DNA of 64,000 nucleotides, taken from Octopus sinensis (Eukaryota). Shown one piece after another: positions 10,520 through 52,690 of this stretch (the first letter of the stretch is position 1; each line of letters begins with the position of its first letter). Made by a program: the position numbers and the translations under genes. The stretch covers positions 15,748,001 through 15,812,000 of the forward strand of contig NC_043022.1 in NCBI RefSeq assembly GCF_006345805.1, in the 5' to 3' direction. The notes under the pieces were generated by a model, which saw only the letters and a program-made list of their open reading frames with translations, was not told the origin of the DNA and made no database searches.

Positions 10520-11495
10520 AATACTTATTTCTTTACTAACCACAAGGGGCTAAACACAGAGAGGACAAACAGAGACAGAAAAACGGATTAAGTCGATTAT
10601 ATCGACCCCAGTGCGTAACTGGTACTTATTTAATTGACCCAGAAAGGATGAAAGGCAAAGTCGACCTCGGCGGAATTTGAACTCAGAACGTAGCGGCAGA
10701 TGAAATACCTATTTCTTTACTACCCACAAGGGGCTAAACACAGAAGGGACAAACAAGGACAGACAAACGGATTAAGTCGATTATATCGACCCCAGTGCGT
10801 AACTGGAACTTATTTAATCGACCCAGAAAGGATGAAAGGCAAAGTCGACCTCGGCGGAATTTGAACTCAGAATGTAGCGGCAGACGAAATACCTATTTCT
10901 TTACTACCCACATGGGGCTAAACATAGGGAGGACAAACAAAGACAGACAAATGGATTAAGTCGATTATATCAACCCCAGTGTGTAACTGGTACTTATTTA
11001 ATTGACCCAGAAAGGATGAAAGGCAAAGTCGACCTCGGCGGAATTTGAACTCAGAACGTAGCGGCAGATGAAATACCTATTTCTTTACTACCCACAAGGG
11101 GCTAAACACAGAAGGGACAAACAAGGACAGACAAACGGATTAAGTCGATTATATCGACCCCAGTGCGTAACTGGTACTTATTTAATCGACCCAGAAAGGA
11201 TGAAAGGCAAAGTCGACCTCGGCGGAATTTGAACTCAGAATGTAGCGGCAGACGAAATACCTATTTCTTTACTACCCACAAGGGGCTAAACACAGAGAGG
11301 ACAAACAAAGACAGACAAATGGATTAAGTCGATTATATCAACCCCAGTGTGTAACTGGTACTTATTTAATTGACCCAGAAAGGATGAAAGTCAAAGTCGA
11401 CCTCAGCGGAATTTGAATCCAGAACGTAGTGGCAGATGAAATACCGCTAAGCATTTCGCCCGGCGTGCTAATGATTCTGCCAGCTCGGTGCCTTT
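10520..11495 (-). repeat. Head-to-tail array of 5 SINE-C units, 184-bp period
   Basis: Unit landmarks at 10526, 10710, 10894, 11078 and 11262; a single intact head at about 11446-11495. Confidence 0.9.
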
Positions 11496-13828: not shown

Positions 13829-15628
13829 TCAATACGTGGCTAGGTTTTCTCTCATTCTGGTTCTGAGCTGTTGGAAATGGAAGAAGCAATCTTGCATGAT
13901 TTTTTCATTGGTATCCAGCTTCTGAGCTGACGAGAAGTGAAACGGACCAATCAAGAAATTTATCGACTGCATGTTGATGTCGGGGAAATGTCTTTGCATA
14001 AATTCTACGAATTTGATGGAAGGGAAATTAATTCTTTTGTCGGCCACGTCCAGCACGTATTCGTCCTCGTCGGAGAACAGTCGTGTCGCCGGTGTGAACG
14101 CTTTCGATATTTCGGTGATGCCTTCGTTCTCCAGCAGCAAAAAATCTATATATTTGCTCAGAATAAATTCAACTTTCGGTGAACCCGACACAGTCTTTGG
14201 GATTTGATGGTTTTGGAAGACGGGAAAGTAATCTTTGGTTCTGTGGTGGTCGATGAGTTTTACGTCCGCTGCTAAAATGGTGATGCAAAAATTGTCTTGC
14301 GACTTGGAATTTTCTTTTAAAAGGCAATCCTCTTGCATTTCGTTTTCCGTAAACGGTAGTTTTTTGGAAGTGGGTGGCCCCGTGCATGGCATACTGACAG
14401 GCAAATCATTGACATTCTGATAGGATTTCGACTTAGAGGGTAAATCTTGAATATTTAAATTAGTTGAAAATGGTTTTTGATTGGGTAGAAAAGAATAAGA
14501 TGTGGAAGGGTGCAACATAGAATGCAGAAGGTAACAGTTTTGAGGGGTTTTCACGAAGGGCCCTGACATGACATTGAGGTCGGAGAAGGAATTGTTTGGA
14601 GACTGGATGTTTTGCTTATAGGTTGGTGGTACGTTTTGATTCCAACACCTTCCAGGAGGATTTCCTAAGGGGAAAGGATGCGGATAGGAAGGTAAGGGCG
14701 TGTTATATGAGAGCTGAGAAGTTGGACACAGGTAATGAGTGCTCCAGTCTGGACTGACGGATGATGGTGATTGAGTGGGAAGTCCAAGAGGAATCCATGG
14801 CATTTCTTGATTGGTTTTGGTAAGATTCAAATTCGAGAAATCTTGACCAGCAGGAAAATTTTGCGTGACAGGTACGTAGTTGAAATTCTGTTGAGTGGGA
14901 AGAGATGAGACGGACAGCATTGGTGCCAATCCAGGCGAAGGATTGGAAGGATTGGTGCAGGAATTCATCATCGTGTTGTGTTGGTTCTCTTCATTCTCTC
15001 CTGAAAGCAACAACCGAAGGCAAGAGTCCTTGTGGCCATATTGCGATGCGGTTTTGCTTTCTAACTCGTTTTGTTCGACTTCAACCTCGTAAATGTTATC
15101 TTTTAACTTATCTTCTTCTGGAATTATCGTCAAATTGGGTTGAACTTCAAAAAATTTAGATTCCTCTTGTTCTGAATGTGGTAGACAATTCGGAATATTG
15201 CCGGAATTGAAGAAGTTCTTATCGCTAGCGTTTGAGATGTAATCACACGACATATCAGGCGACGGCGGAGATGTTGCTGGTTTCAAATTGTTAGAATTTA
15301 ATTCCGGAAGTTCAAACTTTAACGTTGAACATATATTGTATTTCTCTTGATAGTTAACAATGTCAAACACCTCATTCCGAATCAACTCTTCATTGCTCAC
15401 TTCCTCCTGTTTAATACGAATCAACGGGACTTCCGAGTTGTTGTTATTGCAGTTATCGCTAGCTTCTTCTTCAACCAATAACCCGATACCTTTCGAATTT
15501 TGCCTTACATCCATTTCAGCTTGGCACAGGTCGATCGGCTGTTTATCTAACGAGCTTTCTATCGTCCCACCAAGATTTCCATTATCACCACACAACTTGC
15601 CTTTATCAACTTCGATGTCATTTTTCAT
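13829..15628 (-). CDS. Uncharacterised 599-aa protein (single long coding exon), likely nuclear/regulatory; probably extends to 15921
   Basis: 1.8-kb non-repetitive ORF in an AT-rich genome. Acidic N-terminal part with a SUMO-type IKQE motif and an LxxLL-like LRLLL; P/S/N/Q-rich middle; globular-looking C-terminal ~150 aa that I do not recognise. Splice acceptor tatatttcag| at 15932-15931 lies upstream. Confidence 0.85.
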   Translation of the reverse strand: MKNDIEVDKGKLCGDNGNLGGTIESSLDKQPIDLCQAEMDVRQNSKGIGLLVEEEASDNCNNNNSEVPLIRIKQEEVSNEELIRNEVFDIVNYQEKYNICSTLKFELPELNSNNLKPATSPPSPDMSCDYISNASDKNFFNSGNIPNCLPHSEQEESKFFEVQPNLTIIPEEDKLKDNIYEVEVEQNELESKTASQYGHKDSCLRLLLSGENEENQHNTMMNSCTNPSNPSPGLAPMLSVSSLPTQQNFNYVPVTQNFPAGQDFSNLNLTKTNQEMPWIPLGLPTQSPSSVSPDWSTHYLCPTSQLSYNTPLPSYPHPFPLGNPPGRCWNQNVPPTYKQNIQSPNNSFSDLNVMSGPFVKTPQNCYLLHSMLHPSTSYSFLPNQKPFSTNLNIQDLPSKSKSYQNVNDLPVSMPCTGPPTSKKLPFTENEMQEDCLLKENSKSQDNFCITILAADVKLIDHHRTKDYFPVFQNHQIPKTVSGSPKVEFILSKYIDFLLLENEGITEISKAFTPATRLFSDEDEYVLDVADKRINFPSIKFVEFMQRHFPDINMQSINFLIGPFHFSSAQKLDTNEKIMQDCFFHFQQLRTRMRENLATY

Positions 15629-15657
15629 TAAACTGGTTTCAGGTCGTTGGAAACTCT

Positions 15658-15921
15658 TCAGCTGAGCGTCAAGATTTTTCTGGCTTTCTCTTTGATATTT
15701 TTACCTAACTTCAAATCTTTGTAAGAGCTTTGAGCACAACCACCCCGCCCAGGGTTTGTCTTGCACTTCTTAACATAGTAGGGACTTGATTTTACTGTCT
15801 GACGTTCTTTCTTGTGGTTATCCGCTTTGATCTCCAGGACGTTAGACACTCCCGGAAAATAGGCTTTGGTCACGTAGTCTGGGTCGTCTGCTGGGTTAGC
15901 TTTGGAACGCAGTCTTTTCAT
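15658..15921 (-). CDS. 87-aa upstream ORF (MKRLRSKANPADDPDYV...), either the frameshifted N-terminus of the 599-aa protein or a uORF
   Basis: The ATG is 9 nt after the acceptor. Its frame overlaps the open upstream extension (15700-15629) of the long ORF; one extra A in the A5 run at 15702-15698 fuses both into 697 aa. Confidence 0.55.
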   Translation of the reverse strand: MKRLRSKANPADDPDYVTKAYFPGVSNVLEIKADNHKKERQTVKSSPYYVKKCKTNPGRGGCAQSSYKDLKLGKNIKEKARKILTLS

Positions 15922-20420: not shown

Positions 20421-22329
20421 AAGCTGACGTTGGCAGCAGCGATTCTGAGACTTGGTGAGATTGTCGAAGACCCTAACGTTCTTTTCTCTTCTTCCTGGTC
20501 ACTTCGAAATCTGCGAAAGAAAAGAAAAGAAAAGATAGAAAGAAAACTGTTACGGAGGTAATCTTCATCGCCCACCCGGCTTAGCACCGCCACCCGCACC
20601 TTTTGGTAGCTTTACCGTAGTCCACCCTGTCAAACATTCGCGACACGTTTTGGGGTTGAGGATATCGTCCTTCTCTCCCATGAATCTTGGAGGAAATGTC
20701 TTAACGCCTGACAAGAATACATTCAAAAATGAATAAGAAAAGAAAAGGAAAAACGAGAAGGAAATTCCAGAGATTGGCCGGATTCTGTCAAGAAATAAAT
20801 GGATGCCGTGATAAGGATGGCCGAGAGAAACCATGGGTGAAGAGTGATTGTGGCCGATTCCGCTTGGATGGTCGCATTCTCCGTCTTGAACCGTGGTTCT
20901 CAACCGTTAAAAAAAATTTTTTTAACTATGGACCCCTTTCATTCCTGTCTTATACTATTGGATCCCCAGGTTTAAAAAAAAATTGTTAGGTTTTTAGAAT
21001 TAAATATTTTTTTCTTTACTCGTTTCAGTCATTAGACTGTGGCCATGCTGGGGCACCGCCTTGAAGAATTTTTAGGCGAATAAATCGGTCCAGGTACTTG
21101 TGAGTTTTTTTTTAAAGTCTCGTACTTATTCTATCGATCTGTTCGGGGACATAAACACACCCAAACCGGTTGTCAACTCACGCACACACACACATACACA
21201 CGATGGGCATCTTTCTACCAAATCAACTCACAAGGCTTTGGTCGGCCCGTGGCCATAGCAGAAGGCACCTGCCGAGGGTCCAACGCAGTGGGATACGAAC
21301 TGTATAAAAGATAAATGTTAAAACATTTTACGTTGTGTGGTAAGTAGCTTGCTAAACAACCACATGGTTCCGGGTTCAGTCCCACTGCGTGGCATCTTGG
21401 GCAAGTGTCTTCTGCTATAGCCCCGGGCCGACCAATGCCTTGTGAGTGGACTTGGTAGACGGAAACTGAAAGAAGCCTGTCGTATATATGTGTATATATA
21501 TATATATGTATGTGTATGTGTTTGTGTGTCTGTGTTTGTCCCCCTAGCATTGCTTGACAGCCGATGCTGGTGTGTTTACGTCCTCGTCACTTAGCGGTTC
21601 GGCAAAAGAGACTGATAGAATAAGTACTGGGATTACAAAGAATAAGTCCCGGGGTCGAGTTGCTCGACTAAAAGGCGGTGCTCCAGCATAGCCGCAGTCA
21701 AAATGACTGAAACAAGTAAAAGAGTAAAGAGTATAACGAATTTTATTGAAGCGTAAACTTTTGACAACCAAATCTTCAAGAGACACCGCACCCCACAAAA
21801 GTCACGTGAACCCCGAGGGAGGAGGAGAAGGAGGAGTAATAGGAGTAGTAGATTGTGTTGTGGAGGTGGAAACTATAGAGAGAGGGAAACACTTGTGTGT
21901 TTGTAGAGATGGAGACGAAGGTGGCATCGAAGAGCATATTGGACGGAGGAGAAGAATACGCACAACCACCCGTAACGTCGAAAACGGGTGGTTGTGCGTA
22001 TATTCTTTACCTTCGCCGCATATTGTTCTTGCTGTTGTGCTTATTTGCCATCCGTTCCTCTCGTCAGTCCCCTTTTTCTTGGCCATTCATCGATCCATCG
22101 ATCCATCTCTGTCCATAGTTTACTGCATCGGTCATGGGGCCGGAGTTCCTCGAGCAATCTCTTCCCTGGGATCCTACCAGAAGTGACCTTCATTACGCTT
22201 TCGGGCTTGATTCCCAATCGCGACCAACTGCGACTATGGATATCATCCAACCATCACCTTACTTGCTATCTTTTTTTATTGATTCCATGGAATTCTAAAA
22301 AGTATGTATTCTAGGAATATACAATATAT

Positions 22330-27550: not shown

Positions 27551-28540
27551 CTCCCCTTTTCCCCCATCTCGTTCACACTCTCTCAGTCCCTTTCTCTCTC
27601 TGTGTCTTCGCACTTTTGCTCTCTTAGTCCCTCTTTCTGTTTGTCTGTCAGTTTCCTCCCCCTCTCTCTCTCTCTCTCTCTCTACTCTATCTATCGATCG
27701 ATCGATCTGTCTCTCCCCTCTCTCTCTCACTCACTCAGATCCTTTTTCTCTTTGTCTCTCACTCTTATATTCTCTCTCTCTCTCTCTCTCTCTCCCTATC
27801 TCCCTCTCTGTCTCTTTCTTCCTCTCTTTCTCTCACTCGTTGTTCTTTATTTCACACGCAAGCGCAACACCAACCCAACCCATATTTCCTGCTTCAGTTT
27901 AGAATATGGCATAATATATTCTGATCGACGAATGTTTCGTTTGTGGTGCTCAAGAGATTTAAACTTGAGCGGATAAAGAAATAAACATGGGTATAAACAA
28001 GTTAGACAGATCAATATATAAAGTTTTACTCAATTAAAACATGAAACACAAAAAATGTATATATGTTTACATACAAAAAGGCTCGACTTACACAGAATAT
28101 AAATGATATAGAGGATTCGAGGGGGTTGAAGAAAAGTTTCTGGAGGCTCGGCGATACAAAATAATGTTTGTAGATTGATTCCATCATAGGATGAGACGAG
28201 CCTCTGTCTTCAGGGAAGAGATCTTACATTTGAGGTGATAAAGGAAAGAATTTCAAAGATGGAATGAGCTTAAAAGCGGTGTATTATCCTGGCGGTTACC
28301 GTGTTTCCTCTTAAATCGGTTTCGTATTCCAGCTAAGCACAACGGTCCTCTTGTGATACCCGAGCTAACAAGATGTGGTTAGGCTCTGGTAACTATTCTC
28401 GCTTGGTAAATTCGAATGTCCTACTCAGGATTGCATAATTTCCGTAGAGTAAGAAATAGGATTCATAATGATGAGGAGAACAGAGACTTTGCACATCCAT
28501 TATTTTATTCAAACAGTTCTTTACGGCATTTTTTCTGGAC

Positions 28541-28646
28541 CTACGCGCGTTTCAAGTGCATTGACTTTACACTGTTAGATATGCAACCTAGTGTCATAAT
28601 CGGTGCAGTTTCGTCAGGTGCTGTTTCATCAGGGTCCGAAGTGAAA
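28541..28646 (-). CDS. Rab-like gene putative exon 4 (FTSDPDETAPDETAPIMTLGCISNSVKSMHLKRA*)
   Basis: gtttttcag| acceptor phase-compatible with the AA|gtaaat donor at 29659; TAG at 28543-28541; AATAAA about 30 nt downstream (28509-28504); adjacent to the assembly gap. Confidence 0.5.
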
Positions 28647-31600
28647 CTGAAAAACTCAACCCAAANNNNNNNNNNNNNNNNNNNNNNNNNNNNNNNNNNN
28701 NNNNNNNNNNNNNNNNNNNNNNNNNNNNNNNNNNNNNNNNNNNNNNNNNNNNNNNNNNNNNNNNNTATCTAAATCAATCATCAACTATCAGATAATACGA
28801 CATCATATACTTATTAAAAACCTACACAATAGCAATGAGATTAGACATTAATACAGTACACAATCAATATGGTGAGATATAACTAAATAAATATAACAAG
28901 ATATAAAAATACATATACATTATAACTGACAGCTGTTTCGGCCATGAAGATAGGTATTCCGAAAAAGAAGGTAAGAAAGGTAAACAAAAATGAAAGAAAA
29001 CAAAGACAACAGACTTATTTATTTATTCATTTATTTATTTCTTATAAAAAGGTTTCTTATTGAAACCAGGAAGATTTGGATCATTGAAGAAACTGTTAAA
29101 TATGAAACTATGATAATTATGGTAAGTTGGTCACGTGACTGTGCCATTCTCTGAAGAACATAAGGAATGTGACTGACGGGGAATATGAAGACGCAATTGG
29201 AAAATGAAGCAAAGCCCTATACGGTTCTAATACACACACACACACACATACACGCACGCACACACATATTGTTTTTGTTTTTAGTTTTATTTTTGTTTTT
29301 GTTTTTTGTATTTATATTTGTGTGGCTTCGTCCGTTTTTTCTGTCCTTGTTTCGTTTACATTCGATCCTTTTTCCAAGAAATCTAATGCTCGCAGCTTAG
29401 TTTTTCCTTGGGGCTGGGCCGTTTCGGAGCAAATATCAGGATTAATCAGCCGAAATTTGCTGTGATGATCCGGTTTCTGACTGAAGATTAAAGGCTTCGA
29501 ATGACGCGTCCGTTTTTTGTGTTCGTTTCTTTGTGTATTTTACGTTCATGTTCCTTTTTTTATATATAATTTTTATACCTATATATATATATAACACTGA
29601 CAAACACACGGAAAGACCCATCCACACACCAAAATTTTGAAATCCTACATCCATTTACTTATCCATTTCCGGTCGGCACTTCCGGCTGTCGCTTAGAATC
29701 ATATCGATCATTCGATAAAAGAGAGAAGATATCGATTCCATTGTGTCTAAATCAACTTCCTGATAAATCAGACCAAGACTCGCTGCAAGGTCGGTCGCCT
29801 GTTTTTCGCTGATGAGTCGCTGTTTCGAACCGTCGTTCAGTCCCACGAGAATAATTCGTGATACAGGGGAAGCTTTTTGGAAGATTTTGGAACACCTGTT
29901 GAATACATGAAAACAATTGTAACATATTGGATTGGAAGCACTCCGTCGGATACGACGATGAGGGTACCGGTTGATCCGAATCAACGGAACAGCCTGCTCG
30001 TGAAATTAACGTGTAAGTGGCTGAGCACTCCACAGACACATGTACCCTTAACGTAGTTCTCGGGGATATTCAGCGTGACACAGAGAGTGACAAGGCCGGC
30101 CCCTTTGAAATACAGGTACAACAGAAACAGGAAGTAAGAGTGAGAGAAAGTTGTGGTGAAAGAGTACAGCAGGGATCACCACCACCCCCTGCCGGAGCCT
30201 CGTGGAGCTTTAGGTGTTTTCGCTCAATAAACACTCACAACGCCCGGTCTGGGAATCGAAACCGCGATCCTATGACCGCGAGTCCGCTGCCCTAACCACT
30301 GGGCCATTGCGCCTCCTGTAACATATATTGGCCAGACCGGTCCATGAAACTAATAATGAAATATTTTAATTGATAAATAAATTATATTATGTGGCCTTCG
30401 GGCCTTTTTCGACAACATTAGCAACAAAATAAATTATCATTTTCACAGTGAACCGTGAGAGTACGGACGATATCTTTATATATAAATGTGAAGTTGTGTG
30501 TCTGTCTCCTACGATTTAGATTCCTAACTACTCCCACATTTTGCGGTGCAGCGTAACCAAAAGCGGGTATCTTATAGTCGTGATTCATATCGAGCTCTTC
30601 TGGGTATTAACGCGCGTCTACGATGAGTCTACGATTTAAAAAAAAAATTACCATAATTTTTTCCCATTTTAATGCTTTTTTTTTTGCTATTATATAAGGG
30701 AAGTAACTCTCTAAAAATGTATTATTAAATCTCAGAACGTAAAAAGCTACAGTAACCCCCCCGCCTTTGTGGTTAACCATATTGAGATGGCTATTATACT
30801 TTACATCTCTAAAAATGCTTATATAGTTATTTCCCTTACAAACCCGAGCAACGCCGGGCGATACTGCTAGTTGTTAATAAGTACAGAAGATTCGGACGCG
30901 AAAATGCTAGTGGCCCCTTTTGACGTTGTTGATAAAGAAAGGGCTGGCTTACCATTTAGGGACATTGACGAAGGTTTCTTTGTTTGTCACATCGAATACA
31001 ATCAAATAACCGTGAACGATTGAACGGTGCGAAATTTCCCATTGGGCGTCGGCTACAATAAACAACAACAACAACAATAATAACAACAACAACTATAGCA
31101 ACAAAAACAACGATGACGATAATAATAATCCTTTCTACTAAAGGCATAAGGCCTGAAATTTGGTGGGAAGAAACTAATCGATTTCATCGACCCCAGTGTT
31201 TCACTGGTACCTAATTTATCGACCCCGAAAGAGTAAAATGCAAAGTCGACCTCTGCGGAATTTGAACTCACAGCGTGGAGACGACGAAATACCTGTTTCT
31301 TTACTACCCACAAGGGGCTAAACACAGAGGGGACAAACAAGGACAGACAAACGGATTAAGTCGATTACATCGATCCCAGTGCGTAACTGGTACTTAATTT
31401 ATCGACCTCGAAAGGATGAAAGGCAAAGTCGACCTCGGCGGAATTTGAACTCACAACGTGGAGACGACGAAATACCTGTTTCTTTACTACCCACAAGGGG
31501 CTAAACACAGAGAGGACAAACAAGGACAGACAAACGGATTAAGTTGATTACATCGACCCCAGTGCGTAACTGGTACTTAATTTATCGACCTCGAAAGGAT

Positions 31601-32956
31601 GAAAGGCAAAGTCGACCTCGGCGGAATTTGAACTCAGAACGTAGCGGCAGACGAAATACCCATTTCTTTACTACCTACAAGGGGCTAAACACAGAGAGGA
31701 CAGACAAACGGATTAAGTCAATTACATCGATCCCAGTGCATAACTGGTACTTAATTTATCGACCTCGAAAGGATGAAAGGCAAAATCGACCTCGGCGGAA
31801 TTTGAACTCAGAACGTAGCGGCAGACGAAATACCCATTTCTTTACTACCTACAAGGTGCTAAACACAGAGAGGACAAACAAGGACGGACAAATGGATTAA
31901 GTCGATTACATCGACCCCAGTACGTAACTGGTACTTAATTTATCGACCTCGAAAGGATGAAAGGCAAAGTCGACCTCGGCGGAATTTGAACTCATAACGT
32001 AACGGCAGACGAAATACGGCTACGCATTTCGCCCGGCGTGCTAACGTTTCTGCCAGCTCCTCGCCGCCTTAATAATGATGATGATGATGATTTCATTTAT
32101 CTATATATATAAAACTGAAGTTATCTGTGTGTGACAGGTTTGGCAGCCTTCAACTGACACTATCTCCTCCAAGACCCTGCGGCGCAAGTTGACCAAAATT
32201 GAGAGTATGATAGAAGAAAGTTTGCTCTTCCTTCCGTAGAAGGAAAAATTCAAATCGGACCATGTTAACACCAAATATTATTTACATCAAAAAGGTGCTT
32301 TTTTTCTATGAAAATCCCTATTTTTTACGATTTTTTTAAGGCTGCCATCTTTCGGTGTATTTTAACCAGAAAAATGTTCACTTAAAGACAATAACAAGCT
32401 ACATAAGGCAAAATTTTTACTTTTCAAAAATTCCAATTCTGAAGGGTCGAAACAAACTCGAGCAACGCCGGGCGATACTGCTAGTTTACCATAAGGGCGA
32501 AGGATGAGGGGGCCAATACAGAGACAGACAGAAAGTGTTGGGATTTACATGTAATAAAGAAATGATAAAATAATTATAAAAAAGAAGTAGATACAATGCA
32601 AAAGAATGGACATGTACATGATATAGAAAGGTTAAAAAAAGTGTGTGTGTGTGGGGGGGGGGAAGATGATAGAGATGTGGCCCTTCAGATACAGAATAAC
32701 CTTTAGGGATAATCGAGGAACCCTACTGTCCGAGATTTCTCTGAAACCCCAGGAGCAAGTGCCCTCTCCAATTCCTTCTCTCCGACTCAAAGGTCTACAC
32801 TCCAAGAGGTACCATCCACTCTTGCCATTTTCGCAACTTTCACCCACCTTTCGATAAACTCACTCGAGGACAACGCACTTCCCTCTCCACTCTCAATTTC
32901 CTTATAATGATGTTGATGATGATGACGACGATGATCGATGACAATGATGATGATGG

Positions 32957-32994
<38 letters not shown>

Positions 32995-33139
32995 TGGCTG
33001 TGTGGTAAATAGCTTGCTAACCAACCACATGGTTCCGGGTTCAGTCCCACTGCGTGGCATCTTGGGCAAGTGTCTTGCTGTAGCCCCGGGCCCGACCAAT
33101 GCCTGTGAGTGGATTTGGTAGACGGAAACTGAAAGAACC

Positions 33140-33177
<38 letters not shown>

Positions 33178-33799
33178 GTTGTGTGTGTGTGTGTTTGTGT
33201 TTGTGTGTGTCTGTGTTTGTCCCCCTAGCATTGCTTGACAACCGATGCTGGTGTGTTTACGTCCCCGTTATTTAGCGGTTCGGCAAAGGAGACCGATAGA
33301 ATAAGTACTGGGCTTACAACGAATAAGTCCTGAGGTCGATTTGCTCGACTAAAGGCGGTGCTCCAGCATGGCCGCAGTCAAATGACTGAAACAAGTAAAA
33401 GAGTAAAGAGTATGATGATGATGATGATGATAAGGGATTAGTTTTATTAAACCACTTACTGCTGGTGTCCTTCAGATGGAGAAGAATTCTTTGCCATCTT
33501 TTTGTATCTTCATCTGTTCTTCTCTGCAACATATTATGGCTGAGTTCACCTCGGTGGTTCAAAACGCAGTTTTTCTTCACGAATTTATCTATCAATGAAG
33601 CTTTCCCCGTCTCAGCTTCTCCGGTAACCACCAAGTTAACTTGATGGATCGATTCATCGATTCTTCCTCTGCTTCCGTCGTCTCTATCTTCAGTGAAATC
33701 GCTTGCATCACCATAAATCTTCTTATTGTTCTTGTTGTTATTATACAGTAACGTGTAACGAGCCATGGAAACTTGGTGGAAATAACCGGTGGCGCACAT
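28541..33799 (-). CDS. Divergent Rab/Ras-fold small GTPase (candidate pseudoGTPase); exons 33799-33460, 31052-30953, 29895-29659 (or to stop 29655), 28646-28541
   Basis: Splicing A|gtaagt..tag|CC, TG|gtaagc..cag|G and AA|gtaaat..cag|T gives 260 aa (226 aa without exon 4): ...VNLVVTGEAETGKASLIDKF...ILLHLKDTSTDAQWEISHRSIVHGYLIVFDVTNKETFVNVPKWCSKIFQKASPVSRIILVGLNDGSKQRLISEKQATDLAASLGLIYQEVDLDTMESISSLFYRMIDMI... This is colinear with the Rab core (b1-P-loop, WDTAG, GxxxVYDVT..SF..V..W, LVGNKxD, ETSAK). Confidence 0.85.
28666..28765. other. Assembly gap (100 N)
   Basis: Run of exactly 100 n. Confidence 1.
29655..29895 (-). CDS. Rab-like gene exon 3 (CSKIFQKASPVSRIILVGLND...RPEMDK)
   Basis: ttttcatgtattcaacag| acceptor, phase 2. 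The N-terminus of track ORF 29655..29984 is SINE-derived and spurious. Confidence 0.85.
29935..30316 (-). mobile_element. SINE family A copy
   Basis: Reverse complement of 3961-4350; its 3' end is about 40 nt from the exon 3 acceptor of the Rab-like gene. Confidence 0.85.
30473..30870 (+). mobile_element. Non-autonomous Helitron (same family as 25235-25729)
   Basis: A|TC...cccgagcaacgccgggcgatactgCTAG|T; lies in intron 2 of the Rab-like gene. Confidence 0.75.
30953..31052 (-). CDS. Rab-like gene exon 2 (TDAQWEISHRSIVHGYLIVFDVTNKETFVNVPKW)
   Basis: ttgtttattgtag| acceptor and TG|gtaagc donor; 100 nt; phase 1-2; not visible in the ORF track. Confidence 0.85.
31130..32072 (-). repeat. Second head-to-tail SINE-C array (periods 183, 184, 174, 184)
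   Basis: Landmarks at about 31292, 31475, 31659, 31833 and 32017; lies in intron 1 of the Rab-like gene. Confidence 0.9.
32100..32484 (+). mobile_element. Non-autonomous Helitron (different internal sequence, same 3' end)
   Basis: A|TCTATATATATAAAA...cgagcaacgccgggcgatactgCTAG|T. Confidence 0.7.
33460..33799 (-). CDS. Rab-like gene exon 1 (P-loop GEAETGKA to DTS)
   Basis: Within ORF 33314..33850; donor GTAAGT at 33459-33454. The start is uncertain (ATG at 33799 or 33766, or an internal exon). Confidence 0.8.
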
Positions 33800-33967
33800 T
33801 TTGTCAGATATATTTTTTATTAGTGACCGGAGAAAATAAAACGAAAACAAATGGGAAAGAGAATTCTTCTATTTTGGAGGTGCAAAAGGCTGAATGGTGT
33901 TAATGGCGATGTTGTGGATGTGACATCAAAGTGTTTCAAGAATGCGTTCTATTTTGAAAAAGGAGGG

Positions 33968-34493
33968 TTTTTAAATTTTTTCTATTGATCCTTTAAAATT
34001 TTTCTATTGATCCTTTAAAATTTTTCTATTGATCCTTTAAAATTTTTCTATTATCCTTTAAAATTTTTCTATTGATCCTTTAAAATTTTTCTATTGATCC
34101 TTTAAAATTTTTCTATTGATCTTTTAAAATTTTTCTATTGATCCTTTAAAATTTTTCTATTGATCCTTTAAAATTTTTCTATTATCCTTTAAAATTTTTC
34201 TATTGATCCTTTAAAATTTTTCTATTGATCCTTTAAAATTTTTCTATTGATCTTTTAAAATTTTTCTATTATCCTTTAAAATTTTTCTATTGATCCTTTA
34301 AAATTTTTCTATTGATCCTTTAAAATTTTTCTATTGATCCTTTAAAATTTTTCTATTGATCTTTTAAAATTTTTCTATTATCCTTTAAAATTTTTCTATT
34401 GATCCTTTAAAATTTTTCTATTGATCCTTTAAAATTTTTCTATTGATCCTTTAAAATTTTTCTATTGATCTTTTAAAATTTTTCTATTGATCC
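33968..34493. repeat. 22-bp minisatellite (tttaaaatttttctattgatcc), about 24 copies
   Basis: Directly visible tandem units, with 21-bp and C>T variants. Confidence 0.95.
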
Positions 34494-34694
34494 TCGGTGT
34501 GTTTCACAAGTTTTTTTTTGTATTTCTCCCAAAATGGCGAATGTTGAACGAACCCAAACGGTTAAAATAATCGTGTCACAACTGAACTTCAGAAATCCGA
34601 CCGTGTTAGCGGTCTCAGCAATTTGTGAGACGGATATGGAAAAGTCGTAGGCGTTGCTGTTCTTCCTAGATAACGAAATAATAATAATAATAAC

Positions 34695-34734
<40 letters not shown>

Positions 34735-34751
34735 GTGATAATAATAATAAT

Positions 34752-35520
34752 AAATGGCAAGAAAAACCTCTCAATGGCAAATATACAAAGAGAGCTAATA
34801 ATGCCGATGTTGACAAAGTCGTTACCCATCAATGGTTAGTGTCTTCTGGCTTAAAATCAGAAGCAGAAGGGTTTATCATAGCAACCAAAGATCAATGCCT
34901 ACCGACACGGAACTACCAGGCCAACATATTAAAGAACAGCAGTAGCCCAACATGTCGAGTATGTCAACAACAAAATGAAACCATTGATCATGTTGTCTCA
35001 ATGTGCAGTTTTCTTGCACCTACAGAGTATCTCAACAGGCATTATAGAACAGCACAATATATTCACTGGGTAATTTGCAAAAGCCTGGACTTGCCCCGTG
35101 ATAAAAACTGGTGGGAACACAAACCACCTCCAGTGCTTGAAAAAGATCACATCTCACTCCTCTGGAATTTCACCTTTCAAACTGACAGAAAGATAGATGC
35201 GAATAGGCTAGACATTATATTGAAAGACTTCAAACAAAAATCATGCCTCCTCATTGATATGACTGTCCCAATCGATATAAATGTATCTGTCAGGACCTAC
35301 CAAAAACTGAGCAAGTATAAAGATTATGAAATAGAAATGAGCAAAATGTGGAACCTCAAGACTAAAACAATACCAGTTTGTCATAGGTGCCCTGGGAATG
35401 ATAGCAAAAGGGGCTGGTCGCTACCAAGCTTAGATACCAGGAAATCCAAAAATGGCAGAAATTCAAAAGAATTTCTCATGGGAACTGTCCATATCCTACG
35501 TAAAATACTGTCTATGTAAT
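34752..35520 (+). mobile_element. R4/Dong-like non-LTR retrotransposon 3' fragment (CCHC knuckle plus restriction-like endonuclease)
   Basis: KWQEKPLNGKY...LKSEAEGFIIATKDQCLPTRNY..CRVCQQQNETIDHVVSMC...NRLDIIL..LLIDMTVP..QKLSKYKDY; 5' end abuts (TAA)n at 34677-34752. Confidence 0.85.
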
Positions 35521-51199: not shown

Positions 51200-52690
51200 T
51201 TTCAATTGCTTACTCAATGAAATTTGACGTAACTCCAAATATAAATCCTGTTTTTATTAAATTACATATAGTCTTTAGACTCAGGTTATATACCGAAACA
51301 GCTCCCAACTCAGTCTGTCATCCCGGTTTTCAAACAGGGAAACAGATCCCTCGCAGTCAACTATCGCCCAATCTCACTCACCTCCCACATCAATAAAATG
51401 TTTGAAAGAGTGGTAAGATCAAGGATAGCTGGCTTCCTGGAGATCCACAAACTCCTAAATGCAAATCAGCATGGCTTTCGCTGTGGCAGGGATTGTCTAA
51501 CACAGCTCTTACACAACATTGAATATATACTTAAAGCCTTGGGAACAGGTTCGAACTCTGATGTCATATATCTTGACTTCAGTAAGTATTTCCTGGCGAA
51601 TAGAATACAACATGTTGTAGTCGATGGAGTCCACTCAAGCCCAGCATAAGTCACCAATGGTGTCCTTCAGGGGACTGTCTTGGGCCCGCTCCTCTTTATA
51701 ATCTACGTAAACTACCTTTCCAGCGTCGTAAATCAACGAAAAATGAAACTATTTGCTGATGACACTAGGCTCCAGCAAATCATCAATGAAGAAGCAGACC
51801 GAACTCAACTCTAGTCTGATCTCTGTGCTGTGAGCCAATGGGCAGACAAAAACAAAATACAACTGAACGAGGGAAAATTTGAGCTGATGCATTTTGGAAG
51901 AAAGTCTATACTAAAACAGCCATACTCCCTTCCTTCAGAGGAACCGCTCACAGCATCTAATAATATCAGAAATCTGGGTGTAATTGTCGATAACAATCTT
52001 AGTTGGATTGCCCACATCAACAATAAGGTCGATATAGCTCGTAGGATGAGCTCCTGGACCTTAAGAACCTTCTGGTCCAGAGAACAAGGTGTCATCATTC
52101 CACTTTTCTCCTCCTTTGTACAGCCACACCTCGAATACTATATATGTGGTCCCCCCATACAAAACAAAACATCTCGAAAATTGAATCACCCCAGAGGGCA
52201 ATCACTAAACGAATTGAAGGCACGACTGATCTCGAATACTGGGACCGCCTTAAAGCCTTGAAACTTTACTCTCTCCAATGCCACCGCGAGCGGTACATCA
52301 TTTGTACGATGTGGAGGATATACCGCCAGCATTGCCCAAACGACCTGAACATTAGTTTCAAGGTTCATCCAAGACTGGGACCACGGGCCATACGTCCCTG
52401 CCCAATTCAGGATCACAACATATGGGTTCACTGCGACACAGTTTCTTTTCCTCAACAGGCCCTGCCCTGTCCAACATTGTCCCTAAACTGATCAAAGAGG
52501 AAAAGGATCCCATCACCTTTAAACGGAGTTTGGACAAATTTCTTCAAGGAATAGCGGATAAGCCACCCATACCTGGATACAACTCACTCAACAAGAGGTC
52601 ACTATTTGAATGGGCCAGAATGCCACAAAACTTGACTTTAAAAAGGATTTAGATAATCCTATCAGATGGTGCTATTAAGTTAGACATAGC
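51200..52690 (+). mobile_element. CR1/L2-group LINE reverse transcriptase fragment (degenerate)
   Basis: YRPISLTSHIIKMFERVV, NQHGFRCGRDCLTQL, VIYLDFSK, GVLQGTVLGPLLFIIYVN, LFADDT, IRNLGVIVDNNLSW; stops, frameshifts and an internal deletion between LDFSK and FLANR. Confidence 0.9.

What the first reader, a model, noticed from the sequence alone, without database searches (positions are those of the whole stretch)
28541..33799. Hidden spliced Rab-fold gene with all five G motifs degenerate: candidate pseudoGTPase
Seen: three exons (33799-33460, 31052-30953, 29895-29659), scattered among SINEs and Helitrons, splice with canonical GT-AG in matching phases into an uninterrupted Rab-like fold. The middle exon is invisible in the ORF track. 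Known: active Ras-superfamily GTPases need G1 GxxxxGK[ST], G2 Thr, G3 DxxG(Q), G4 NKxD and G5 SA[KL]. Here G1 is GEAETGKA, the G2/IGVDF region is replaced, G3 is DTST, G4 is GLND and G5 is EVDLD. No C-terminal CAAX/CC/CXC is present in either possible ending, while the hydrophobic core (VNLVVTG, GYLIVFDVT..TF.NV.KW, IILVG, LF..MI..I) and the reading frame are preserved. Inference: a nucleotide-independent, non-prenylated Ras-fold scaffold under purifying selection, possibly lineage-specific and uncharacterised.
Basis: partly seen in the sequence, partly recalled or inferred. Interest (0 to 1): 0.8.

Follow-up and report, generated by a model that had tools for sequence, protein, structure and literature searches.

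The report
Decaying Rab-like gene in octopus
This is a real, already annotated three-exon octopus gene for a Rab-type protein that has lost its GTP-binding motifs and lipid anchor, but it now changes about as fast as the surrounding non-coding DNA and is broken in the sister species, so it looks like a gene being lost, not a well-conserved new scaffold.

Summary
The sequence observation holds. The three minus-strand exons (33799-33460, 31052-30953, 29895-29655) join through GT-AG introns in phases 1 and 2. The 226-aa product is letter for letter RefSeq XP_029651403.2, "Rab-35-like isoform X1" of Octopus sinensis, so the gene is not hidden. It matches Pfam Ras end to end and models as a Rab fold.

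The motif readings are correct: GEAETGKA, DTST, GLND, EVDLD and no C-terminal cysteine.

The gene is the octopus orthologue of a mollusc-wide atypical Rab clade found in oyster, scallops, a gastropod and cuttlefish. It shares their intron positions and phases, and shares an N-terminal motif with the decapodiform cephalopods. G2 and G5 are already atypical in the whole clade, and G4 in cephalopods. G3 and the prenyl cysteines were lost only in Octopus. The P-loop Ser/Thr is lost only in O. sinensis; O. bimaculoides keeps GKT.

"Under purifying selection" is not supported. Coding and flanking non-coding divergence are both 7.7%. Omega is 0.54 (about 0.28-1.05, not significantly below 1). O. bimaculoides has a net 61-nt deletion of beta5/G4 plus a 1-nt insertion in exon 3.

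The 260-aa ending lies in a dispersed repeat beyond the assembly gap and is rejected.

Verdict: a Rab relic under relaxed constraint. A functional pseudoGTPase remains possible at about 0.3.

The parts
33460..33799 (-). Coding exon 1 (codons 1-113 plus the first base of codon 114). It holds the N-terminal extension, beta1, the P-loop, alpha1, the replaced switch I region, and beta2/beta3 up to DTS.
   Evidence: Identical to RefSeq X1. 91% nt identity to the O. bimaculoides exon, with a conserved GTAAGT donor.
33749..33799 (-). N-terminal motif MCATGYFHQVSMARYTL, shared across cephalopods (consensus M-x-x-T-G-Y-[YF]-H-Q-V-S-x-x-R-Y).
   Evidence: It is shared with Sepia and a second decapodiform transcript, with synonymous codon differences. 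The first 54 nt are identical between the two Octopus species (P=0.0135 at 7.66% divergence).
33599..33622 (-). G1 / P-loop GEAETGKA. The Ser/Thr that binds Mg2+ is replaced by Ala (GCT).
   Evidence: O. bimaculoides has GEPETGKT (ACT) and Sepia has GDAATGKS, so the Ala is derived in O. sinensis.
33460..33469 (-). G3 remnant D-T-S-(T). The last codon is completed by 31052-31051. The Gly and Gln of DTAGQ are lost, and switch II is 3-4 residues shorter.
   Evidence: The loss is shared by both Octopus species. Every other member of the clade has DTAGQE.
31053..33459 (-). Intron 1 (phase 1), full of repeats, including a 183-nt tandem array at 31178-32017.
   Evidence: Same position and phase as intron 1 of the oyster and gastropod orthologues.
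30953..31052 (-). Coding exon 2 (100 nt): the rest of switch II, beta4 (GYLIVFDVT), and alpha3 up to the Trp codon.
   Evidence: 90% nt identity to O. bimaculoides with conserved AG and GT.
29896..30952 (-). Intron 2 (phase 2, inside the Trp codon TG|G).
   Evidence: Same position and phase in oyster and gastropod.
29655..29895 (-). Coding exon 3 with stop TAA (29657-29655): alpha3, beta5, the G4 remnant, alpha4, beta6, the G5 remnant and alpha5. There is no C-terminal cysteine motif.
29832..29843 (-). G4 remnant G-L-N-D, in place of GNKxD.
   Evidence: Sepia and the second decapodiform have GTNC[FL], so NKxD was already lost in the cephalopod ancestor.
29745..29759 (-). G5 remnant E-V-D-L-D, in place of ETSAK.
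   Evidence: The whole molluscan clade has EV.[SL]D-type sequences here (oyster EVNLDN).
29806..29867 (-). A 62-nt segment that encodes PVSRIILVGLNDGSKQRLISE (beta5 and G4). It is missing from the O. bimaculoides genome and is skipped in RefSeq isoform X2 of O. sinensis. Both share the junction CTTCC|AAAAC, and the segment has no GT-AG ends.
   Evidence: and direct reading.
28666..28765 (.). Assembly gap, 890 nt downstream of the stop codon and outside the CDS.
   Evidence: The flanks belong to two different dispersed repeat families.
28541..28646 (-). Rejected: it is repeat-derived.
   Evidence: It lies in a dispersed repeat with at least 46 copies at 72-84% identity. It contains a 15-nt tandem duplication that produces 'DETAPDETAP'. 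The 260-aa protein is absent from the protein collection. It has no match in 10 kb downstream of the O. bimaculoides gene.

Best explanation
The locus is a genuine three-exon gene, RefSeq 'Rab-35-like isoform X1'. It is the Octopus orthologue of a mollusc-restricted, unclassified ('RabX'-type) Rab1-related clade.

The GTPase machinery was lost in steps:
- The whole clade lacks the canonical switch I/G2 (TIGVDF) and the G5 SAK motif.
- Cephalopods lost the G4 NKxD motif.
- The Octopus stem lineage then lost G3/switch II (DTAGQ became DTST, with a shortened switch II) and the C-terminal prenyl cysteines, on a very long branch.
- O. sinensis alone lost the P-loop Ser/Thr.

If the protein is made, it is inferred to be soluble and unable to bind Mg-GTP normally, so it cannot work as a membrane-anchored Rab switch.

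Since the split of O. sinensis and O. bimaculoides, the coding sequence has changed as fast as the neighbouring non-coding DNA, with only a weak excess of synonymous changes. The O. bimaculoides copy has frameshifting indels in exon 3.

The most likely reading is a Rab-derived gene in late functional decay. Constraint is relaxed, one species already has a broken copy, and the other still has an open frame. It does not look like a scaffold held by clear purifying selection.

Shown: gene structure, identity to RefSeq, fold, motif states, orthology, evolutionary rates, and the lesions in the sister species. Inferred: loss of nucleotide binding, loss of membrane anchoring, and loss of function.
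For: - Gene model and RefSeq identity.
- Ras profile and fold.
- Only one orthologue above 33% identity among 1.84 billion representative proteins (O. bimaculoides).
- Clade membership:
  - Tree: Octopus is sister to the decapodiforms (89/88) inside the molluscan clade (99/97), with an Octopus stem of 4.19 substitutions per site.
  - Intron positions and phases are identical in oyster and gastropod.
  - The N-terminal motif is shared with decapodiform transcripts.
- Stepwise motif loss is read from alignment A2.
- Relaxed constraint:
  - CDS divergence is 7.7% against 7.66% for non-coding DNA.
  - Differences by codon position are 17/10/19.
  - Omega is 0.54, p=0.063 against 1, interval about 0.28-1.05.
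  - The Sepia orthologue pair has omega 0.235 (p=0.0002), codon positions 5/5/22, and a CDS more conserved than its UTRs.
- Disabling indels in O. bimaculoides exon 3, and a 167-aa annotated product.
- With Sepia as outgroup, derived replacements at otherwise conserved sites occur in O. sinensis as well: GKT to GKA, Tyr to Ser in the YY of switch II, EN to KE.
- No transcript contig with this ORF was found in the protein collection, while the Sepia orthologue cluster (six variants at 90% identity or more) is on more than 30 RNA-seq contigs.
Against: - The O. sinensis frame and all four splice sites are intact.
- Non-coding indel rates predict about 2.7 frameshifting indels per lineage in 678 nt, and O. 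sinensis has none (P about 0.07).
- The omega point estimate is below 1, and it is 0.30 in the exon 3 tail.
- The very long Octopus stem branch, crossed without losing the frame, the introns or the core, implies selection on a coding product for most of the gene's history.
- The N-terminal motif is still perfectly conserved.
- The difference in omega between Octopus and Sepia is not significant (p=0.10).
- The O. bimaculoides lesions rest on one assembly lineage.
Confidence: 0.55

Rival explanations
1. One reading: a functional class-i pseudoGTPase. The Rab fold is kept as a soluble, nucleotide-independent interaction scaffold. It may act through the conserved cephalopod N-terminal motif and is under weak purifying selection in O. 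sinensis. The O. bimaculoides lesion would then be a recent loss, an allele or an assembly error.
For: - The ORF and canonical splice sites are intact.
- The fold core is confidently modelled.
- The long Octopus stem branch without ORF decay argues for long-term selection after G3 and CAAX were lost.
- The N-terminal motif is conserved between octopods and decapodiforms at protein level, and the first 54 nt are identical between the Octopus species.
- Omega is 0.54 overall and 0.30 in the tail downstream of the O. bimaculoides frameshift, which suggests that lesion is recent.
- There are no frameshifts in O. sinensis against 2.7 expected.
- Class-i pseudoGTPases that act as binding modules are known, for example AAGAB (PMC12490416).
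Against: - Neutrality is not rejected (p=0.063).
- CDS divergence equals non-coding divergence.
- The sister species carries frameshifts.
- O. sinensis itself has recent replacements at clade-invariant positions.
- No transcript contigs were found.
Confidence: 0.3
2. It is still an atypical nucleotide-binding protein: a low-specificity or non-hydrolysing GTP/ATP binder, like other non-canonical small GTPases. In this view the molluscan clade works with altered G2, G4 and G5, and the Octopus protein keeps phosphate binding through the P-loop Lys and the Asp of G3.
For: - GxxxxGK and the G3 Asp are retained in both Octopus species, and O. bimaculoides keeps the full GKT.
- Clade relatives keep G1, G3 and prenylation and are under purifying selection in Sepia, so altered G4 and G5 are compatible with function in this clade.
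Against: - O. sinensis has GKA.
- The Gly and Gln of G3, the guanine-specific Asp of G4 and the SAK of G5 are all absent, and switch II is shortened.
- The only copy with an intact P-loop is the frameshifted one.
Confidence: 0.1
3. It is not a gene at all: chance open frames, or a gene-prediction artefact among repeats.
For: Transcript support could not be inspected here. The RefSeq models are computational.
Against: - The Pfam Ras match spans all three exons end to end.
- Intron positions and phases are identical to the oyster and gastropod orthologues.
- An orthologous locus exists in O. bimaculoides, with 8 kb of collinear upstream DNA.
- The N-terminus is conserved with decapodiform cephalopods.
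Confidence: 0.02

Closest known systems
Molluscan atypical Rab1-related clade, given varying automatic names such as 'RABD2a-like', 'RIC1-like', 'Rab-3C-like' or 'uncharacterized'. Members: Crassostrea angulata LOC128189337, Pecten maximus, Mizuhopecten yessoensis, Gigantopelta aegis, and Sepia esculenta transcripts.
   Same: - Three coding exons, with intron 1 in phase 1 after DT[AS] and intron 2 in phase 2 inside the Trp codon.
- No TIGVDF switch I.
- A G5 of the EV.[SL]D type.
- A beta4 motif of the GCLIVFDVT..TF..V..W type.
- Tree placement inside the clade.
- The N-terminal TGY.HQVS..RY motif, shared with the decapodiform members.
   Different: - Octopus lacks DTAGQERYRSLTSSYY: it has DTST and a shorter switch II.
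- It lacks the C-terminal CVIS/CXC/CC motif.
- In O. sinensis it lacks the P-loop Ser/Thr.
- It has an added low-complexity N-terminal insert.
- Its stem branch is roughly 6-10 times longer.
- It is not nested in the DJ-1 gene as in oyster and gastropod; the DJ-1 gene is 7 Mb away on the same scaffold.
Canonical Rab GTPases (Rab1, Rab35, Rab8/Sec4)
   Same: - Ras/Rab fold.
- Best sequence matches in the PDB are Sec4, Rab35 and Rab27 (E about 1e-12).
- Best fold matches are Rab8a and Rab5.
- A RabF5-like LIVFDVT motif.
   Different: - At most 33% identity to any Rab, which is RabX territory under the 40% rule of PMC3192815.
- All G motifs are damaged.
- RabF1-4 are absent.
- There is no prenylation site.
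Class-i pseudoGTPases (for example the AAGAB N-terminal domain and the p190RhoGAP pseudoGTPase domains)
   Same: GTPase fold with missing G-motif residues. The expected consequence is no nucleotide binding or hydrolysis (PMC12490416; PMC5593906).
   Different: Those domains are conserved over long evolutionary spans and have demonstrated binding partners. This gene shows near-neutral recent evolution and a broken orthologue, and nucleotide binding is untested.
Unitary or decaying pseudogenes of small GTPases
   Same: - Loss of catalytic and targeting motifs.
- Substitution rate equal to the flanking DNA.
- Frameshifts in one species.
   Different: In O. sinensis the frame and splice sites are still intact, and the omega point estimate is below 1.

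Membership tests
Ras-superfamily small G domain (Pfam PF00071 Ras) | Profile match above the curated cut-off, covering the whole domain | tested here: met
   65.3 bits against a cut-off of 21.6, profile positions 2-160 of 162.
Ras-superfamily small G domain (Pfam PF00071 Ras) | Six-stranded beta sheet and five-helix G-domain fold | tested here: met
   AF2 with a 47-sequence alignment gives mean pLDDT 70, with 84-96 in the core. Foldseek TM about 0.75 (normalised to the target) to Rab8a, Rab5 and KRAS. This is a prediction, not a solved structure.
Functional Rab GTPase | G1 GxxxxGK[ST] | tested here: not met
   O. sinensis has GEAETGKA. The O. bimaculoides orthologue has GEPETGKT.
Functional Rab GTPase | G2 / switch I Thr in a TIGVDF (RabF1) context | tested here: not met
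   No TIGVDF; the region is replaced by ELSHNMLQRRTDEDTK. Whether a nearby Ser could substitute cannot be told from sequence.
Functional Rab GTPase | G3 DxxGQ | tested here: not met
   DTSTD in O. sinensis and DTSTE in O. bimaculoides.
Functional Rab GTPase | G4 NKxD | tested here: not met
   GLND(G). The Asn, Lys and guanine-specific Asp positions are not conserved.
Functional Rab GTPase | G5 SAK/SAL | tested here: not met
   EVDLD.
Functional Rab GTPase | C-terminal CC/CXC/CAAX prenylation motif | tested here: not met
   The protein ends ...SRKCRPEMDK. The single Cys is 7 residues from the end. The alternative 260-aa ending is repeat-derived and also lacks the motif.
Functional Rab GTPase | At least 40% identity to a defined Rab subfamily (Rabifier rule, PMC3192815) | tested here: not met
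   Apart from the O. bimaculoides orthologue (86%), every full-domain match in 1.84 billion representatives is at most 33% identical; a few partial matches reach 36-41% over the C-terminal part only.
Molluscan atypical Rab1-related clade | Shared intron positions and phases | tested here: met
   Phase 1 after DT[AS] and phase 2 in the Trp codon, in Octopus, Crassostrea and Gigantopelta.
Molluscan atypical Rab1-related clade | Phylogenetic placement inside the clade | tested here: met
   The clade has 99/97 support, and Octopus plus decapodiforms has 89/88. The tool raised a long-branch caution. The N-terminal motif supports the placement independently.
Molluscan atypical Rab1-related clade | Retained G1, retained G3 (DTAGQERYRS) and a C-terminal prenyl motif | tested here: not met
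   G3 and the prenyl motif are lost in both Octopus species, and G1 in O. sinensis. The gene is therefore a degenerate descendant of the clade and is not expected to work as the other members do.
Molluscan atypical Rab1-related clade | Nested antisense in the DJ-1/PfpI gene (seen in oyster and gastropod) | tested here: not met
   The multi-exon DJ-1 gene of O. sinensis is on the same scaffold, C26, but at 22.77 Mb, 7 Mb from the window.
Class-i pseudoGTPase | No nucleotide binding or hydrolysis | not testable with these tools
   Inferred from the motif losses only. It needs a mant-nucleotide or thermal-shift assay.
Class-i pseudoGTPase | Maintained by selection as a functional protein | tested here: inconclusive
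   Omega is 0.54 (about 0.28-1.05, p=0.063 against 1), and the CDS rate equals the non-coding rate. The orthologue is frameshifted, but the O. sinensis ORF is intact.
Pseudogene | A disabling mutation in this genome | tested here: not met
   226 open codons and four canonical splice sites.
Pseudogene | Neutral evolution, or disabling lesions in the orthologue | tested here: met
   O. bimaculoides has a net 61-nt deletion plus a 1-nt insertion in exon 3, and neutrality is not rejected.

The most novel reading that the evidence does not exclude
An Octopus-specific class-i pseudoGTPase. In this reading a mollusc-only atypical Rab lost its GTP switch and lipid anchor in steps, yet was kept for a long time as a soluble Rab-fold scaffold. 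It would carry an N-terminal peptide motif (TGY.HQVS..RY) conserved between octopods and decapodiform cephalopods. This would be a dated, stepwise natural example of a GTPase turning into a pseudoGTPase, with intermediate states still alive in cuttlefish, scallops and oysters.
Probability: 0.27. Interest if true: 0.5.

Novelty: new member of a known kind. Interest (0 to 1): 0.3.

Why it matters
As a single gene it is minor. It is a computationally annotated, fast-evolving Rab relic of doubtful function.

Its value is comparative. The same orthologous gene can be seen at successive stages of losing a GTPase switch:
- canonical Rab1-like relatives;
- a molluscan clade without canonical switch I and G5;
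- cephalopods without NKxD;
- Octopus without G3 and without prenylation;
- O. sinensis without the P-loop hydroxyl;
- O. bimaculoides with a frameshift.

That series could help show which motif losses a Rab fold tolerates while still under selection (Sepia, omega 0.24), and where it tips into decay.

It is also a warning for annotation. The automatic names 'Rab-35-like' and 'RABD2a-like' suggest a function this protein almost certainly cannot perform.

Tried and rejected
- Single-sequence AF2 of the 226-aa protein was useless (pLDDT 33). It was replaced by the alignment-based model.
- Exact-protein look-ups for transcript contigs of X1 and X2 found nothing. A further homologue search with exon 1 alone found only the two reference-genome proteins. 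So no third octopod sequence and no direct transcript evidence could be obtained.
- The 260-aa ending through a fourth exon (28646-28541) was rejected. It is not in the protein collection. It is not conserved downstream of the O. bimaculoides gene. It lies inside a dispersed repeat and carries a 15-nt tandem duplication. It is also separated from exon 3 by the assembly gap.
- Downstream synteny with O. bimaculoides failed. Nothing collinear was found beyond window 29580 within 10 kb of L004. Orthology therefore rests on 8 kb of collinear upstream DNA and on the exons.
- A search for a better, intact orthologue of the Sepia protein elsewhere in the O. sinensis genome found none. Every other hit is a generic Rab exon or an intronless copy at 45% identity or less over comparable lengths (short fragments reach 56%).
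- The Pecten locus could not be fetched. Oyster and gastropod loci were used instead.
- A rescue of the O. bimaculoides frame by an alternative AG acceptor was checked by hand on the sequence. No acceptor gives the Rab frame.
- A tRNA scan for SINE heads in the introns found none. The 'Helitron' identity of the intronic repeats was not tested.
- The difference in omega between Octopus and Sepia is not significant (p=0.10), so 'relaxation relative to Sepia' is a trend and not a result.

Full report
**What is there.** The window is Octopus sinensis scaffold C26:15,748,001-15,812,000. On the minus strand the three proposed exons are bounded by canonical sites:
- Exon 1 (33799-33460) ends A|GTAAGT, phase 1.
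- Exon 2 (31052-30953) follows TTGTAG| and ends TG|GTAAGC, phase 2.
- Exon 3 starts at 29895 after CAACAG| and runs to a TAA at 29657-29655.

The joined 226-aa product is letter for letter RefSeq XP_029651403.2, 'ras-related protein Rab-35-like isoform X1 [Octopus sinensis]'. A second model, X2 (XP_036369550.1, 173 aa), is in the same cluster. The gene is therefore real in structure but not hidden.

It matches Pfam Ras at 65.3 bits over profile positions 2-160 of 162. Its best solved relatives are Sec4, Rab35 and Rab27, at E about 1e-12. An AF2 model built on 47 aligned relatives has pLDDT 84-96 in the core. Confidence is low in residues 1-48 and in the switch I/interswitch region (82-100). 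The model superposes on Rab8a, Rab5 and KRAS with target-normalised TM of about 0.75.

**The assembly gap.** The gap (28666-28765) lies 890 nt beyond the stop codon, so the 226-aa CDS does not depend on it. That ending uses donor AA|GTAAAT at 29659 and a fourth exon at 28646-28541, so its intron would span the gap. Continuity across the gap cannot be shown.

The right flank (28766-28957) is one roughly 192-nt arm of a very high-copy element. Elsewhere in the genome it occurs as close inverted pairs, like a MITE. The left flank (about 28270-28620, in some copies to 28660) belongs to another dispersed repeat, with at least 46 copies at 72-84% identity. That repeat contains most of the supposed exon.

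That exon also holds a 15-nt tandem duplication, which creates the 'DETAPDETAP' peptide. The 260-aa protein is not in the protein collection. Nothing like it lies within 10 kb downstream of the O. bimaculoides gene. I reject the 260-aa ending.

**Motif states.**
- G1 is GEAETGKA.
- There is no TIGVDF.
- G3 is DTST.
- G4 is GLND.
- G5 is EVDLD.
- There is no C-terminal CC/CXC/CAAX.

**Relatives.** A search of 1.84 billion representative proteins found one orthologue, O. bimaculoides XP_014783395.1 (86% identity). No other full-domain match exceeds 33%; a few partial matches reach 36-41% over the C-terminal part only. Among the weaker hits one family stands out:
- transcripts from Sepia esculenta RNA-seq; two of the runs, SRR23936169 and SRR20545809, were identified through PMC10571815 and PMC9538352;
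- transcripts from a second, unidentified decapodiform;
- genome-annotated proteins of Gigantopelta, Pecten, Mizuhopecten and Crassostrea.

Three independent lines tie the octopus gene to this family:
1. In an ML tree the Octopus pair is sister to the decapodiform pair (89/88), inside a molluscan clade with 99/97 support. The Octopus stem is extremely long, at 4.19 substitutions per site, and the tool issued a long-branch caution.
2. The oyster and gastropod genes have exactly the same structure. They have three coding exons, with intron 1 in phase 1 in the codon after DTA and intron 2 in phase 2 inside the Trp codon.
3. The N-terminus MCATGYFHQVSMARY matches Sepia MSQTGYYHQVSTGRY and the second decapodiform MGQTGYYHQVSMGRY. 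The codon differences are synonymous, so the conservation is at protein level.

In oyster and gastropod the gene is nested antisense in a DJ-1/PfpI gene. In O. sinensis the multi-exon DJ-1 gene is on the same scaffold but 7 Mb away.

**Stepwise degeneration.** This is read from alignment A2:
- The whole molluscan clade lacks the canonical switch I and has EV.[SL]D-type sequences in place of the G5 SAK.
- G4 varies: NNCD in scallops, IKRD in oyster, TKSH in the gastropod, TNC[FL] in decapodiforms.
- All non-octopus members keep GxxxxGK[ST], DTAGQERYRSLTSSYY and a C-terminal CVIS/CXC/CC.
- Both Octopus species have lost G3 (DTST[D/E]), have a shortened switch II and have lost the prenyl cysteines.
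- Only O. sinensis has GKA. O. bimaculoides has GEPETGKT, so the loss of the P-loop hydroxyl is a recent single-base change (ACT to GCT).

'All five G motifs degenerate' is therefore true only of this species. Two of the five were already atypical before cephalopods arose.

**Is it under purifying selection?** The O. bimaculoides locus (L004) is collinear with the window for about 8 kb upstream and through the exons.
- Over 3734 aligned non-coding sites the two species differ at 7.66%.
- Over the 597 shared coding sites they differ at 7.7% (46 changes). By codon position the changes split 17/10/19.
- Nei-Gojobori gives dN 0.061, dS 0.165 and a ratio of 0.37.
- A pairwise ML codon model that estimates kappa (3.5) gives omega 0.54. 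The LRT against omega=1 gives p=0.063, and the profile interval is about 0.28-1.05.

For comparison, two Sepia species' orthologues give omega 0.235 (p=0.0002), codon positions 5/5/22, and a CDS more conserved (4.8%) than the UTRs (about 7.6%). The Octopus-Sepia difference in omega is not itself significant (p=0.10).

So strong constraint is excluded, and neutrality is not. With Sepia as outgroup, O. sinensis carries derived replacements at positions conserved in the clade: GKT to GKA, a switch II Tyr to Ser, and EN to KE. Relaxation is therefore not confined to the O. bimaculoides lineage.

**The sister-species lesion.** In O. bimaculoides exon 3 has a net 61-nt deletion that removes the codons for PVSRIILVGLNDGSKQRLISE (beta5 and G4). 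It also has a 1-nt insertion 128 nt further on. Read from exon 2, the frame stops after 167 aa, which is exactly the annotated protein. No alternative AG acceptor restores the Rab frame (hand check).

Two caveats apply:
- Both O. bimaculoides assembly versions descend from the same contigs.
- In the 49 codons downstream of the frameshift omega is 0.30, which suggests the lesion is recent.

One point is unexplained. RefSeq isoform X2 of O. sinensis skips 62 nt (29867-29806) with no GT-AG ends. Its junction, CTTCC|AAAAC, is the same as the O. bimaculoides deletion junction. Either the same deletion allele exists in the transcripts used for annotation, or the model was projected from the other species.

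**Points in favour of a function.**
- The O. sinensis frame and all four splice sites are intact.
- Non-coding indel rates predict about 2.7 frameshifting indels per lineage in 678 nt, and none is seen (P about 0.07).
- The long Octopus stem branch was crossed without loss of frame, introns or hydrophobic core. That needs selection on a coding product for most of the gene's history.
- The first 54 nt are identical between the two Octopus species (P=0.0135), and they encode the cephalopod-wide N-terminal motif.

**Points against.** No transcript contig that encodes this ORF was found in the protein collection. The Sepia orthologue cluster, by contrast, appears on more than 30 RNA-seq contigs. 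The tools may withhold records close to this genome, so this evidence is weak.

**Verdict.** The protein is a Rab-fold product that almost certainly cannot act as a prenylated GTP switch. However, it is an annotated member of an older molluscan 'RabX'-type clade (by the 40% rule of PMC3192815), and the evidence for current purifying selection is weak.

My probabilities are:
- about 0.55 for a gene in late functional decay;
- about 0.3 for a functional class-i pseudoGTPase scaffold of the kind defined for AAGAB (PMC12490416);
- about 0.1 for a protein that still binds nucleotide.

Loss of nucleotide binding, loss of membrane anchoring and the expression status are inferences. None was measured here.

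Noticed in passing
L045:301-1230 (Crassostrea angulata) and L046:301-6493 (Gigantopelta aegis): In both oyster and gastropod the atypical Rab gene lies nested on the opposite strand inside a DJ-1/PfpI (PARK7-like) gene. This is conserved microsynteny across two mollusc classes. In O. sinensis the multi-exon DJ-1 gene is on the same scaffold, but 7 Mb away (C26:22,771,122-22,775,657).
   Followed up: partly
window 29806-29867 (-): RefSeq isoform X2 of O. sinensis skips exactly this 62-nt segment. The segment has no GT-AG ends, and the resulting junction (CTTCC|AAAAC) is the same as that of the genomic deletion in O. bimaculoides. This could be a shared or segregating deletion allele, or a model projected across species. 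Unexplained.
   Followed up: partly
window 33749-33799 (-); L005:194-244; L035:166-216; L027:552-602: A short N-terminal motif, M-x-x-T-G-Y-[YF]-H-Q-V-S-x-x-R-Y, is conserved between Octopus and decapodiform cephalopods at protein level. It is absent from the bivalve and gastropod members of the clade. The gene call for the second decapodiform (P0160) starts at an internal Met and misses the motif.
   Followed up: partly
window 28766-28957: The right flank of the assembly gap is a roughly 192-nt arm of a very high-copy element (938 first-look candidates, 89-94% identity). Elsewhere it occurs as inverted pairs 150-900 nt apart, like a MITE or foldback element. The gap probably hides the rest of the element.
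   Followed up: partly
window 31178-32017 (intron 1); similar units at about 10582-11494: A tandem array of 4.6 copies of a 183-nt SINE-like unit (91% matches). The same unit is dispersed in the window and in the O. bimaculoides locus (L004:15919-16071 and 20641-20857). ARAGORN finds no tRNA-like head in 28400-34000.
   Followed up: partly
window 13829-15700 (-): An uninterrupted 623-codon open frame with no Pfam match. It is probably a large coding exon of a neighbouring gene, rich in Ser, Pro, Asn and Gln.
   Followed up: no
window 51272-52491 (+) and 34674-35519 (+): Fragments of retroelement reverse transcriptase: RVT_1 at E=7e-6 and zf-RVT at E=1e-4, both below the Pfam cut-offs. The second lies about 900 nt upstream of the Rab-like gene's start codon.
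   Followed up: no
window below 29580, compared with L004:12476-22287: Collinearity with O. bimaculoides stops about 75 nt after the stop codon. Only dispersed repeats match in the next 10 kb, so the 3' flank has been rearranged or filled with insertions in one of the species.
   Followed up: partly
G000:C8702:645345-645866 (-): A second DJ-1/PfpI copy in O. sinensis is a single uninterrupted stretch that covers the whole domain with one in-frame TAG. It looks like a processed (retro)copy.
   Followed up: no
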